Origin: Octopus bimaculoides
Lineage: Eukaryota
Direction of reading: 5' to 3'
NCBI RefSeq assembly: GCF_001194135.2
Contig: NC_069001.1
Span: 25,644,898-25,708,897 of the forward strand
DNA length: 64,000 nt
Part shown: positions 11,342 to 11,760 of the stretch, piece by piece
Numbering within the stretch: the stretch's first letter is position 1
How the letters are laid out: each line of letters opens with the position of its first letter
The notes under the pieces: model-generated
What the model was told of the DNA's origin: nothing
The model's input: the letters and a program-made list of their open reading frames with translations, nothing else
Database searches by the model: none
Program-made: the position numbers and the translations under genes

Positions 11342-11760
11342 CCAAATTTGGTGAAAAATTTGTGGCGGTGTATTGAACAGTTGGAGTAGGTGATATTATC
11401 ACATCACCTCCTTTTTTCATCCGTTTAAAATATTCCTGTAGCACACCTACAGGAATATAAATGTTTTCGGTTGCCACTGCGGCAACCGCCGAAAACTTTT
11501 TCCCATTGTTGGCATAAGTGCCAACTTCATCGTTGCTTTCTGTAAAAGCATACTTCTCGTGTATAATTTCAACAGACATGGTTGAAATTAATAACAATAT
11601 CCAGATAATAAATTAAATAAATTGGTTTCCCACAAAACTGGGAAACCTATAAAAAGTTTTTCCTCTCAAAGAGGACAGCAATTTTCAAAACTACACAGCA
11701 CAGTTCAAATCCCACTCCCGTTGGGGAGGAGGGGTACAAAAATAGTTTTAAAAGACTATT
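11342..11760. other. Array of short, sequence-unrelated hairpins (function unknown)
   Basis: About 10 inverted repeats with 5-12 bp stems and loops of at most 8 nt, read directly from the sequence; listed in findings. Confidence 0.8.

What the first reader, a model, noticed from the sequence alone, without database searches (positions are those of the whole stretch)
11342..11760. Dense array of about 10 unrelated perfect hairpins in non-repeated sequence
Seen directly: atattcctgtag-cacac-ctacaggaatat (12 bp, 11430-11458); cggttgcc-actgc-ggcaaccg (8 bp, 11468-11488, extendable by gttttcgg/ccgaaaac); gttggca-taag-tgccaac (7 bp, 11508-11525); tgcttt/aaagca (11534-11550); taatttcaac-agacatg-gttgaaatta (10 bp, 11564-11590); ggtttccca-caaaac-tgggaaacc (9 bp, 11624-11647); tcctct/agagga (11661-11675); ctccc/gggag (11715-11728); aatagt/actatt (11741-11760); aggtgat/atcacct (11388-11409); palindrome ccaaatttgg (11342-11351). 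The stems share no sequence, so this is not a tandem repeat, and I saw no comparable density elsewhere in the window. The stems are too short for pre-miRNAs. Inference: a structured ncRNA or 5'UTR, a cruciform/ssDNA regulatory module, or the terminus of an unclassified mobile element. It follows CCAAT/CRE-like motifs and precedes consensus plus-strand donors at 11880 and 12028, which would fit a structured first exon.
Basis: partly seen in the sequence, partly recalled or inferred. Interest (0 to 1): 0.75.

Follow-up and report, generated by a model that had tools for sequence, protein, structure and literature searches.

The report
Dense cluster of short DNA hairpins
About 300-450 bases of an octopus-like genome really do hold seven to eleven unrelated, near-perfect short hairpin-forming repeats packed side by side next to a stray telomere repeat, but nothing shows it is an RNA gene, and it looks most like a scar of fold-back copying during DNA break repair or a piece of an unknown inserted element.

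Summary
Every hairpin is at the stated coordinates. Window 11330-11770 holds 7 perfect hairpins (stem >=7, loop 3-8) against 0.22 expected in shuffles, and it folds with z about -9 as RNA on either strand and as ssDNA. Taken singly, H1-H7 (11385-11650) are robust, H8 is borderline, and H0, H9 and H10 are weak.

The block is discrete. A decayed interstitial telomeric repeat (11292-11329) lies to its left and (AC)12-A15-N21-T15 (11781-11855) to its right. The signal is strand-symmetric Watson-Crick pairing (local MFE -118.6 on plus, -117.7 on minus), so nothing points to a strand-specific RNA.

Negative results:
- No Rfam family, tRNA, TIR, TSD or second copy in the window.
- The 90-aa minus-strand ORF has no real homologue.
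- No copy number, orthologue or expression data could be obtained. The accessible collections returned no relative of the window's ORFs or transposon proteins.

My best reading (confidence 0.35) is DNA-level palindromes made by fold-back template switching at a repaired break, followed by neutral decay. The main rivals are an inserted fragment of an unclassified element or retrocopied structured RNA (0.25) and a structured 5'UTR or ncRNA (0.13).

The feature is real and odd, but it is a single unexplained locus. Interest 0.4.

The parts
11292..11329 (+). Decayed interstitial telomeric repeat: TTCGGG-T-TTAGAG-TTAGGG-TC-TTAGGG-TTAGGG-TTA. Its four G3 tracts could also form a G-quadruplex on the plus strand.
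   Evidence: Read directly. TRF reports period 6, 4.5 copies, 80% matches. It is the only TTAGGGTTAGGG in the window.
11336..11362 (.). H0: palindrome CCAAATTTGG, alternatively CAAATTT-ggtgaa-AAATTTG. Weak on its own.
   Evidence: Single-hairpin DNA fold z -0.3.
11385..11412 (.). H1: AGGTGAT-attatcac-ATCACCT (10 pairs with 1 mismatch). The right arm is stuttered (ATCAC twice).
   Evidence: z -3.2. Stutter.
11430..11458 (.). H2: 12-bp perfect stem ATATTCCTGTAG with loop CACAC.
   Evidence: z -9.6.
11462..11497 (.). H3: CGGTTGCC-actgc-GGCAACCG, extended by GTTTT/AAAAC across a 3-nt bulge. The bulge is a CCG duplication in the right arm.
   Evidence: z -4.4.
11508..11525 (.). H4: GTTGGCA-taag-TGCCAAC.
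   Evidence: z -4.7.
11534..11550 (.). H5: TGCTTT-ctgta-AAAGCA.
   Evidence: z -4.8.
11564..11590 (.). H6: TAATTTCAAC-agacatg-GTTGAAATTA. The loop holds the ATG of the minus-strand ORF.
   Evidence: z -5.0.
11621..11650 (.). H7: GGTTTCCCA-caaaac-TGGGAAACC (9 perfect pairs, 11 of 12 when extended).
   Evidence: z -4.3.
11661..11675 (.). H8: TCCTCT-caa-AGAGGA. Borderline.
   Evidence: z -2.4.
11711..11733 (.). H9: CTCCC-gttg-GGGAG with an irregular extension. Weak.
   Evidence: z -1.9.
11741..11766 (.). H10: AATAGT-tttaaaag-ACTATT, followed by a second tandem ACTATT. Weak.
   Evidence: z -1.1.
11781..11855 (+). Low-complexity right border: (AC)12, A15, a 21-nt spacer, then T15. A15 and T15 form a 15-bp inverted repeat.
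   Evidence: (I1).
11307..11597 (-). Open reading frame (96 aa from TTG, 90 aa from ATG at 11579) running through H0-H6. Judged spurious.
   Evidence: No Pfam hit and no homologue. The exhaustive HMMER search gave only three unrelated repeat proteins, each matching a different short patch. The ORF length is within the window's background.
11128..11142 (+). CCAAT followed by a CRE-like TGACGTC, about 200 bp upstream of TATAAA at 11328. Motif matches only.

Best explanation
The block (robust core 11385-11650, possibly 11331-11780) is a set of DNA-level palindromes, not a selected RNA structure.

I think it arose at a chromosome break. A 3' end was extended and repeatedly folded back on itself, or switched to the complementary strand. 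Each fold-back copied the 6-13 bases just made or just passed after a 3-8-base turn, which writes one perfect, cleanly bounded inverted repeat per switch.

Two features are taken as marks of the same or a neighbouring repair episode: the telomeric hexamers immediately to the left, and the slippage-type tracts ((AC)12, A15, T15) to the right. Since then the block has decayed neutrally by a few percent.

On this reading it has no assigned function. Its only expected activity is to form hairpins whenever the DNA is single-stranded, which can stall replication.

Shown: the palindromes, their density, their strand symmetry, the telomeric repeat, and the lack of coding or known-RNA signal. Inferred: the break, the fold-back copying, and the link between the palindromes and the telomeric repeat.
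For: 1. Stems are pure Watson-Crick with clean ends and share no sequence. Template switching is known to produce exactly this in a single event (PMC8794818).
2. The fold is strand-symmetric: local MFE -118.6 against -117.7, 9 against 8 G-U pairs, and ssDNA z -9.5. This is expected for a DNA-level origin. An RNA maintained on one strand would normally show G-U asymmetry.
3. The block has sharp edges that coincide with a telomeric repeat on one side and homopolymer/dinucleotide tracts on the other. Short interstitial telomeric repeats are documented insertions at repaired double-strand breaks, often accompanied by extra 'random' sequence (PMC8537989).
4. The only tandem stutters touching arms are in the right arms: ATCAC twice in H1, CCG twice in H3, ACTATT twice in H10. 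None occur in left arms (and reading). This is what low-processivity re-priming on the same template, moving 5'->3' away from the telomeric repeat, would leave. At 3 against 0 it is not significant.
5. Defects in the extended stems (about 3% per site) and in the telomeric repeat (2 substitutions and 2 indels in about 35 nt) are of the same order. That fits one origin followed by neutral decay (reading).
6. There is no coding, Rfam, tRNA, TIR or TSD signal.
Against: - Ten switches in about 400 bp, with none in the surrounding 60 kb, needs either an extreme local hot spot or one long multi-switch event. I know of no documented germ-line case of this size. Reported templated insertions at repaired breaks are usually tens of bases (own knowledge).
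- The non-palindromic parts (left arms, linkers) are not copied from the flanks, so their source is unexplained.
- Their G+C (35.6%) equals the genomic background, which suits ordinary or inserted sequence as well as a repair product.
- The first robust hairpin starts 55 bp from the telomeric repeat and the last ends about 100 bp before (AC)12, so the link to those tracts may be coincidental.
- No outgroup sequence was available, so no ancestral state supports any single switch.
Confidence: 0.35

Rival explanations
1. The block is an inserted piece of an unclassified element. It could be a 5'-truncated retrocopy of a hairpin-rich RNA (the 3' end of a LINE/SINE-type element, a viral RNA or a host 3'UTR) with the plus strand as sense and (AC)12A15 as its tail. 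Alternatively it could be the cis-acting end of an element that moves through a single-stranded DNA intermediate. The hairpins would then be recognition or priming structures for the element's own enzyme.
For: - It is a discrete block of about 450 bp with sharp structural edges.
- An A15 run preceded by a microsatellite lies at its plus-strand 3' side.
- LINEs in this window do end in microsatellite-type tails, here (AAT)n.
- The window is dense in transposon fragments.
- G+C equals the genomic background.
- Near-perfect stems would fit a young copy.
Against: - No second copy exists in 64 kb.
- No TIR or TSD was found. The one 12-nt direct repeat is within background.
- It does not meet Helitron or Helentron/HINE end rules (PMC4067079; reading).
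- Known element ends carry one to three palindromes, not seven to ten unrelated ones (own knowledge).
- An RNA source would normally bring G-U pairs and strand asymmetry, and none is seen.
- T or A runs of five or more on both strands argue against a Pol III SINE.
Confidence: 0.25
2. The block is a functional structured RNA on the plus strand. It would be either the 5'UTR/first exon of a gene driven by the CCAAT/CRE/TATA motifs and spliced at 11879 or 12027, or a stand-alone non-coding RNA in which each hairpin is a protein-binding module.
For: - The fold z-score is extreme.
- Promoter-like motifs lie in a sensible order upstream, including the only plus-strand TGACGTC in the window.
- Two of the eleven plus-strand GGTAAG lie just downstream, and an ATG with A at -3 sits 16 nt before the first donor.
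- The three non-Watson-Crick positions in the extended stems of H0 and H10 are G-T on the plus strand (reading).
Against: - The minus strand folds equally well.
- No Rfam match.
- No shared loop motif, unlike known hairpin clusters in UTRs.
- The would-be 5'UTR contains upstream ATGs at 11461 and 11578.
- No downstream coding exon could be identified in the window.
- No expression or conservation data are available.
Confidence: 0.13
3. This is a telomerase-RNA-related insertion. Telomerase added the hexamers at a break and then read past its template, so the 35-45 nt right of the repeat (11330-11370, including H0) would be cDNA of the 5' end of the cephalopod telomerase RNA. H0 would be its template-boundary hairpin. 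This is the 'type B TERC-ITS' arrangement described in vertebrates. It would explain only the left edge, not H1-H10.
For: - The geometry fits. The flank lies downstream of the G-strand repeats in the orientation expected for read-through (PMC8537989).
- Mollusc telomerase RNAs place the template about 33-40 nt from the 5' end, directly after a P1.1 hairpin (PMC8480181).
- Here a hairpin-capable segment lies 6-11 nt from the repeat and about 37 nt would be spanned.
Against: - H0 is not significant as a hairpin.
- A 6-11-nt linker is longer than expected for a boundary helix.
- No cephalopod telomerase RNA is available to compare.
- The locus itself does not look like the gene. It has 5.5 degenerate repeats rather than 1.5-2, I saw no H/ACA arrangement by eye, and the fold z is only -2.2.
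Confidence: 0.07
4. The block is a cluster of palindromic binding sites for dimeric DNA-binding proteins, that is, an enhancer or promoter module.
For: Several palindromes resemble known dimer sites by eye: CCAAATTTGG (CArG-like), TTGGC-N6-GCCAA (NFI-like), GTTGCC-N5-GGCAAC (X-box-like) and CACACCT (T-box half-site). A 14-bp E-box palindrome lies at 11143-11156.
Against: - The spacings are off by one to three bases from the known consensus sites (own knowledge).
- 10-12-bp perfect arms are far longer than such sites need.
- The resemblances were found by inspection after the fact, with no statistical control.
Confidence: 0.05
5. The block is an assembly or library artefact.
For: The window is a gapped short-read-type scaffold with 13 N runs.
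Against: - The block is 580 bp from the nearest gap.
- The palindromes are ten different sequences and none is a known palindromic adaptor or linker (own knowledge).
- No match to plasmids or phages.
- Artefactual chimeras give long inverted segments, not 7-12-bp stems with 4-7-nt loops.
Confidence: 0.03

Closest known systems
Template-switch mutations / quasipalindrome correction (Loytynoja & Goldman 2017, PMC5453318; Monttinen & Loytynoja 2022, PMC8794818)
   Same: They create or perfect a reverse-complement repeat with a short spacer in one step. The resulting stems are perfect, cleanly bounded, sequence-independent and strand-symmetric.
   Different: Described events are isolated, one hairpin per locus. 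Here seven to eleven sit side by side in 300-450 bp, and no ancestral state is available to show any single event.
Snap-back (in cis) synthesis and terminal-transferase cycling by DNA polymerase theta during end joining (Kent et al. 2016, eLife; cited from memory, not read here)
   Same: It predicts runs of new sequence punctuated by short fold-back copies and re-priming stutters at a repaired break.
   Different: Products reported in cells are tens of bases, not hundreds. The enzyme's involvement here is pure inference.
Short interstitial telomeric sequences and TERC-ITS inserted at double-strand-break repair (PMC8537989, PMC2246262)
   Same: A few telomeric hexamers lie at an internal site with unrelated extra sequence directly beside them. 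The orientation is compatible with the 'type B' arrangement.
   Different: The adjacent sequence in vertebrates is 25-98 bp of telomerase RNA. Here the neighbour is a 300-450-bp palindrome array of unknown source, and no empty orthologous site could be examined.
Helitron, Helitron2 and Helentron/HINE termini (PMC4067079)
   Same: These are eukaryotic elements that move through single-stranded DNA. They carry short palindromes near their ends and often microsatellites and T runs.
   Different: They carry one to three palindromes, with identical 12-15-bp subterminal inverted repeats at both ends or TC...CTRR termini. None of these features is present here.
Hairpin clusters in mRNA untranslated regions, e.g. 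the six METTL16 hairpins of the MAT2A 3'UTR (PMC10578476) or the iron-responsive elements of transferrin-receptor mRNA (own knowledge)
   Same: Several independent short hairpins with unrelated stems lie within a few hundred nucleotides.
   Different: Those share a conserved loop motif and are strand-specific. Here the loops share nothing and both strands fold equally. One minus-strand loop, UACAG in H5, resembles the METTL16 motif, which is likely chance.

Membership tests
Any curated RNA family (Rfam 15) | Covariance-model score at or above the family's gathering threshold | tested here: not met
   Best hits score 9.6-24 bits against thresholds of 34-376, with E 0.12-10.
pre-miRNA | Single hairpin of about 60 nt with an imperfect stem of about 22 bp | tested here: not met
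   The longest stems are 12 bp (H2) and 13 bp with a bulge (H3).
tRNA gene / tRNA-derived Pol III SINE | Cloverleaf or A and B boxes, and no internal run of four or more T before the end | tested here: not met
   ARAGORN finds nothing at default settings and only typical low-score calls in permissive modes. T5-T6 runs lie at 11411, 11497 and 11656, and A5 runs are present on the other strand.
Canonical Helitron end | 3' CTRR preceded at about 11 nt by one 16-20-nt palindrome, 5' TC, insertion between A and T (PMC4067079) | tested here: not met
   No hairpin on either strand is followed at 6-15 nt by CTRR-T (reading).
Helentron / HINE (DINE-1-like) | The same 12-15-bp subterminal inverted repeat at both ends, plus a 3' palindrome (PMC4067079) | tested here: not met
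   No repeated subterminal sequence is found and all arms are unrelated.
TIR DNA transposon / MITE | Terminal inverted repeats flanked by a target-site duplication | tested here: not met
   Only low-complexity T/GT against AC/A matches were found (I10). There is no TIR with the neighbouring pogo fragment.
Retrocopy (LINE-mediated) | 3' A-rich tail | tested here: met
   A15 at 11805-11819, preceded by (AC)12.
Retrocopy (LINE-mediated) | Target-site duplication directly flanking the insert | tested here: not met
   No direct repeat abuts the tail. The 12-nt repeat at 11408/11923 is misplaced and within background.
Dispersed repeat of any kind | More than one copy in the genome | not testable with these tools
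   Single copy in the 64-kb window. No cephalopod genome is searchable. Exact-pattern scans of viral, metagenome and prokaryote collections are empty.
Template-switch hairpin | Perfect reverse-complement arms a few bases apart | tested here: met
Template-switch hairpin | Ancestral or outgroup sequence lacking the copied arm | not testable with these tools
   No orthologue could be fetched.
Interstitial telomeric sequence inserted at break repair | Telomeric hexamers at an internal site | tested here: met
   5.5 units including three perfect TTAGGG. That TTAGGG is the molluscan telomere unit is own knowledge.
Interstitial telomeric sequence inserted at break repair | Orthologous empty site | not testable with these tools
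   No related genome is available.
TERC-ITS | The flank matches the species' telomerase RNA | not testable with these tools
   No cephalopod telomerase RNA appears among the 21 mollusc RNAs of PMC8480181 or elsewhere in the library.
Telomerase RNA gene (animal type) | Template of 1.5-2 repeats, followed by a pseudoknot and a 3' H/ACA domain | tested here: inconclusive
   5.5 partly degenerate repeats instead of 1.5-2. No H box/ACA arrangement was seen by eye. Minus strand 10960-11372 folds with z only -2.2. No model of invertebrate telomerase RNA was available.
Parvovirus-type terminal hairpin | Long outer stem enclosing two small palindromes (own knowledge) | tested here: not met
   The hairpins are serial, not nested.
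CRESS-DNA virus origin | NANTATTAC in the loop of a stem-loop next to a Rep gene (own knowledge) | tested here: not met
   GACTATTAC at 11753-11761 lies in the arm of H10, not in a loop, and there is no Rep-like ORF.
Protein-coding exon (minus-strand ORF 11307-11597) | Homologues or a domain match | tested here: not met
   The ORF length is unexceptional.
Nuclear copy of the mitochondrial control region | Similarity to mtDNA, flanking mt genes, very low G+C | tested here: inconclusive
   G+C is 35.6% against 21.5% for a whole octopus mitogenome (PMC8245087, abstract). No mt gene is visible in six frames. No mtDNA sequence was at hand to align.

The most novel reading that the evidence does not exclude
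The whole stretch from the telomeric hexamers to the A15 run (about 11292-11819) was written in one germ-line repair event on a single 3' end. First telomerase acted, then a low-processivity polymerase alternated untemplated addition with fold-back copying. This would give about 450 bp of new, database-orphan sequence whose only order is its hairpins. It would be a fossil showing that break repair can create hundreds of bases of novel DNA in an animal germ line.
Probability: 0.12. Interest if true: 0.7.

Novelty: new variant of a known kind. Interest (0 to 1): 0.4.

Why it matters
- If the block is a repair product, it is an unusually large and legible record of fold-back template switching. 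It would show how hairpin-rich sequence, the raw material for new structured RNAs, can appear at once rather than base by base.
- If it is instead the end of an unrecognised mobile element or a structured RNA, it would add a new family to the poorly annotated cephalopod repeat and RNA repertoire.
- If the 40 nt beside the telomeric repeat derive from telomerase RNA, they would give a search handle for the cephalopod telomerase RNA. That RNA is absent from the published mollusc set.
- All three outcomes can be decided cheaply with public octopod genomes and RNA-seq.
- If the block proves to be a single, unconserved, untranscribed locus, it is a curiosity of mutation with no wider consequence.

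Tried and rejected
- **Coding reading of the minus-strand ORF.** No Pfam hit. No word-sharing homologue. Exhaustive HMMER over 1.84 billion representatives gave three unrelated repeat proteins, each matching a different short patch many times. Rejected.
- **Known RNA families.** Nothing in Rfam. The weak U7, SmY and snoRNA hits are far below threshold.
- **tRNA/SINE.**. Rejected.
- **Second copy in the window.** BLASTN with word size 9 found only the (AC)n tract.
- **Vector, phage or plasmid contamination.** No blastn match.
- **Exact hairpin patterns.** No hit in IMG/VR, JGI metagenomes or GTDB genomes, nor as text in papers.
- **Fetching the locus or orthologues through proteins.** The ORF is not on record. 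Six neighbouring ORFs concatenated gave no hit. A LINE C-terminal ORF gave no hit. These searches returned no relative from a related genome, so no octopus DNA could be sampled.
- **TIRs shared with the neighbouring pogo/Tigger fragment.** None.
- **Target-site duplication.** The 12-nt repeat CTCCTTTTTTCA (11408 and 11923) is one of about 20 such pairs in the window and is misplaced for any simple model.
- **Templating from the flanks.** No k-mer excess, direct or inverted.
- **Telomerase RNA gene on the minus strand.** Weak fold and no H/ACA layout.
- **Bacterial-type terminator scan.** 5 found against 0.9 expected, which merely restates the hairpins.
- **Look-alikes noticed and set aside as post-hoc.** The Sm-site-like AAUUUGUGG (11357-11365), the METTL16-like UACAG loop (H5, minus strand), the CRESS-like GACTATTAC, the B-box-like AGTTCAAATCC (11702-11712), and the CArG, NFI, X-box and T-box resemblances.
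Full report
**What is there**

| Hairpin | Coordinates | Sequence | Note |
|---|---|---|---|
| H0 | 11336-11362 | CCAAATTTGG palindrome, or 7-bp stem | |
| H1 | 11385-11412 | AGGTGAT/ATCACCT | |
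| H2 | 11430-11458 | 12-bp stem | |
| H3 | 11462-11497 | 8 bp, 13 bp across a 3-nt bulge | |
| H4 | 11508-11525 | 7-bp stem | |
| H5 | 11534-11550 | 6-bp stem | |
| H6 | 11564-11590 | 10-bp stem | |
| H7 | 11621-11650 | 9-bp stem | |
| H8 | 11661-11675 | 6-bp stem | |
| H9 | 11711-11733 | 5-bp stem | |
| H10 | 11741-11760 | 6-bp stem | |

Loops are 3-8 nt and the stems share no sequence.

**Is it more than chance?**

Yes.
- In 11330-11770 there are 7 perfect hairpins with stem >=7 and loop 3-8. 2000 dinucleotide-preserving shuffles give 0.22 (maximum 3), and the rest of the window gives 0.28 per 441 bp.
- The block folds with z = -9.2 (plus-strand RNA), -8.2 (minus-strand RNA) and -9.5 (ssDNA), and no shuffle does as well.
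- A 200-nt sliding scan of the whole window gives five consecutive windows (11301-11900) with z from -4.2 to -7.7. Both flanks are near zero, so the block has sharp edges.
- Folded one at a time, H1-H7 are each significant, H8 is borderline, and H0, H9 and H10 are not.

The robust array is seven to eight hairpins in about 290 bp. In 11388-11590, roughly 78% of bases lie inside a hairpin.

**Surroundings**

- The window looks like a gapped, repeat-rich, octopus-type scaffold: 13 N runs, abundant (TA)n and (CA)n, and several copies of one SINE. It was not tested.
- A pogo/Tigger DDE_1 fragment lies at 9336-10331 on the minus strand, and a SINE at about 10370-10975.
- Immediately left of the block is a decayed interstitial telomeric repeat, TTCGGG-T-TTAGAG-TTAGGG-TC-TTAGGG-TTAGGG-TTA (11294-11329). 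It is the only TTAGGGTTAGGG in the window.
- Right of the block lie (AC)12, A15, 21 nt and T15 (11781-11855).
- Upstream on the plus strand are CCAAT and the window's only plus-strand TGACGTC (11128-11142) and a TATAAA (11328).
- Downstream are two of the eleven plus-strand GGTAAG (11879, 12027).

**Strand and age**

- With base pairs limited to 40 nt, the two strands fold equally: -118.6 against -117.7 kcal/mol, with 9 against 8 G-U pairs. The signal is therefore Watson-Crick palindromy in the DNA, with no sign of selection on one RNA strand.
- Stems have clean ends. Where they can be extended, about five defects appear in about 95-110 pairs, or roughly 3% per site.
- The telomeric repeat shows two substitutions and two small indels in about 35 nt.
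- Both figures are compatible with one origin followed by neutral decay. This is an inference.

**What it is not**

- **Not coding.** The minus-strand ORF (11307-11597, 90 aa from the ATG in the loop of H6) has no Pfam match and no homologue. In an exhaustive HMMER search it gave only three unrelated repeat proteins, each hitting a different short patch. Stop-free stretches of this length are common in the window.
- **Not a known RNA.** No Rfam family comes near threshold. No tRNA was found. Stems are too short for pre-miRNAs.
- **Not a Pol III transcript.** Runs of five or more T or A on both strands argue against a full-length one.
- **No transposon hallmarks.** There is no second copy in the window, no TIR and no usable target-site duplication. 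No Helitron or Helentron/HINE terminal signature is present (PMC4067079).
- **Not contamination.** No match to plasmids or phages, nor in viral, metagenome or prokaryote collections.
- **Not copied from the flanks**.
- **Probably not mitochondrial.** A mitochondrial control-region origin is unlikely on composition, 35.6% G+C against 21.5% for an octopus mitogenome.
- **Not the telomerase RNA gene.** The minus strand downstream of the CCCTAA tract folds weakly (z -2.2) and shows no H/ACA layout.

**Most likely mechanism (confidence 0.35)**

The block is best read as DNA-level palindromes written by fold-back or inter-strand template switching at a repaired break.
- Template switching is documented to create perfect, cleanly bounded stems in a single event, irrespective of sequence (PMC8794818; PMC5453318).
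- Short interstitial telomeric repeats are documented insertions at double-strand-break repair, often with extra sequence beside them (PMC8537989).
- The only tandem stutters touching arms are in right arms: ATCAC twice in H1, CCG twice in H3 and ACTATT twice in H10. Re-priming on the same template while synthesis proceeds 5'->3' away from the telomeric repeat would leave this pattern. At three against none it is only a hint.
- Polymerase theta is known in vitro to alternate untemplated addition with snap-back copying (Kent et al. 2016, from memory).

Weaknesses:
- Such density has no documented germ-line precedent.
- The source of the non-palindromic parts is unknown.
- The robust hairpins start 55 bp from the telomeric repeat.

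**Rivals**

1. **Inserted fragment of an unclassified element or retrocopied structured RNA, plus strand sense, (AC)12A15 as tail (0.25).** For: the discrete block, the A-tail, the transposon-rich context, and microsatellite-type LINE tails elsewhere in the window. Against: no TSD, no second copy, strand symmetry, and no known end with so many unrelated palindromes.
2. **Structured 5'UTR/first exon or ncRNA (0.13).** It is supported only by motif order and the fold score. Strand symmetry, upstream ATGs and the lack of any identifiable downstream exon count against it.
3. **Telomerase read-through, TERC-ITS type B (0.07).** This would explain only 11330-11370. The geometry and the roughly 37-nt span fit mollusc telomerase RNAs, whose template sits about 33-40 nt from the 5' end after a P1.1 hairpin (PMC8480181). 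No cephalopod telomerase RNA exists to compare.
4. **Palindromic transcription-factor sites (0.05).**
5. **Artefact (0.03).**

**Comparison with what is known, and novelty**

The block works like a template-switch hairpin repeated many times, and it sits like extra sequence beside an interstitial telomeric repeat. I do not file it as a member of any transposon or RNA family, because every defining feature that could be tested was not met. I rate it a new variant of a known kind, an unusually dense cluster of template-switch-type palindromes. A mobile-element or RNA explanation remains open.

**Limits**

The three decisive facts are genome-wide copy number, the state of the orthologous locus in other octopods, and transcription. 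None could be obtained. The searchable DNA collections hold no cephalopod genome, and the protein databases returned nothing related to this window. The verdict therefore rests on one sequence.

Noticed in passing
window 1784-2037: A long inverted repeat with 103-nt arms, 89% complementary, and a 48-nt spacer. It is by far the strongest fold in the window (z -20.8 for 1801-2000). It looks like a foldback/MITE-type element or a long-hairpin RNA locus.
   Followed up: partly
window 11292-11329: The only telomeric-repeat tract in the window. It has 5.5 TTAGGG-like units, more degenerate at the left end, and four G3 runs that could form a G-quadruplex on the plus strand.
   Followed up: yes
window 9336-10331 (minus strand): A frameshifted pogo/Tigger-type transposase fragment (Pfam DDE_1, E 3e-10). 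Its 5' side abuts a SINE copy at about 10370-10975. Its terminal repeats were not found.
   Followed up: partly
window 10370-10975, 13340-13700, 6140-6480 and others: Several copies of one abundant SINE-like repeat, each containing an internal (TA)n/(TG)n tract. I recognised it from memory as the common octopus SINE. This was not verified with a tool.
   Followed up: no
window 19472-19830 (plus) and 2860-3440 (minus): Two copies of the 3' end of one LINE family. Both end in the same short 3'UTR followed by an (AAT)n tail, which shows that LINEs here carry microsatellite-type tails.
   Followed up: partly
window 11805-11855: A15 and T15 separated by 21 nt form a perfect 15-bp A:T inverted repeat directly after (AC)12. 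Two opposed A-tails, or an inverted duplication, are both possible.
   Followed up: no
window 11408-11419 and 11923-11934: A perfect 12-nt direct repeat CTCCTTTTTTCA, 515 bp apart, brackets most of the array. About 20 such pairs exist in the window, so it is probably chance.
   Followed up: yes
window 11143-11156: A perfect 14-bp palindrome TATTCAGCTGAATA with an E-box core, 1 nt after the CCAAT/TGACGTC pair and outside the hairpin block.
   Followed up: no
window 11357-11365 (plus); 11534-11550 (minus); 11753-11766 (plus): Three look-alike motifs: AATTTGTGG identical to the U1-type Sm site, a UACAG loop on a 6-bp stem resembling METTL16 substrates, and GACTATTAC plus a tandem ACTATT resembling a CRESS-virus nonanucleotide with an iteron. 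All are probably chance, given how many motifs were compared.
   Followed up: no
window 61737-62583 and 39742-40234: Mariner-like transposase fragments, judged by eye from the translations.
   Followed up: no
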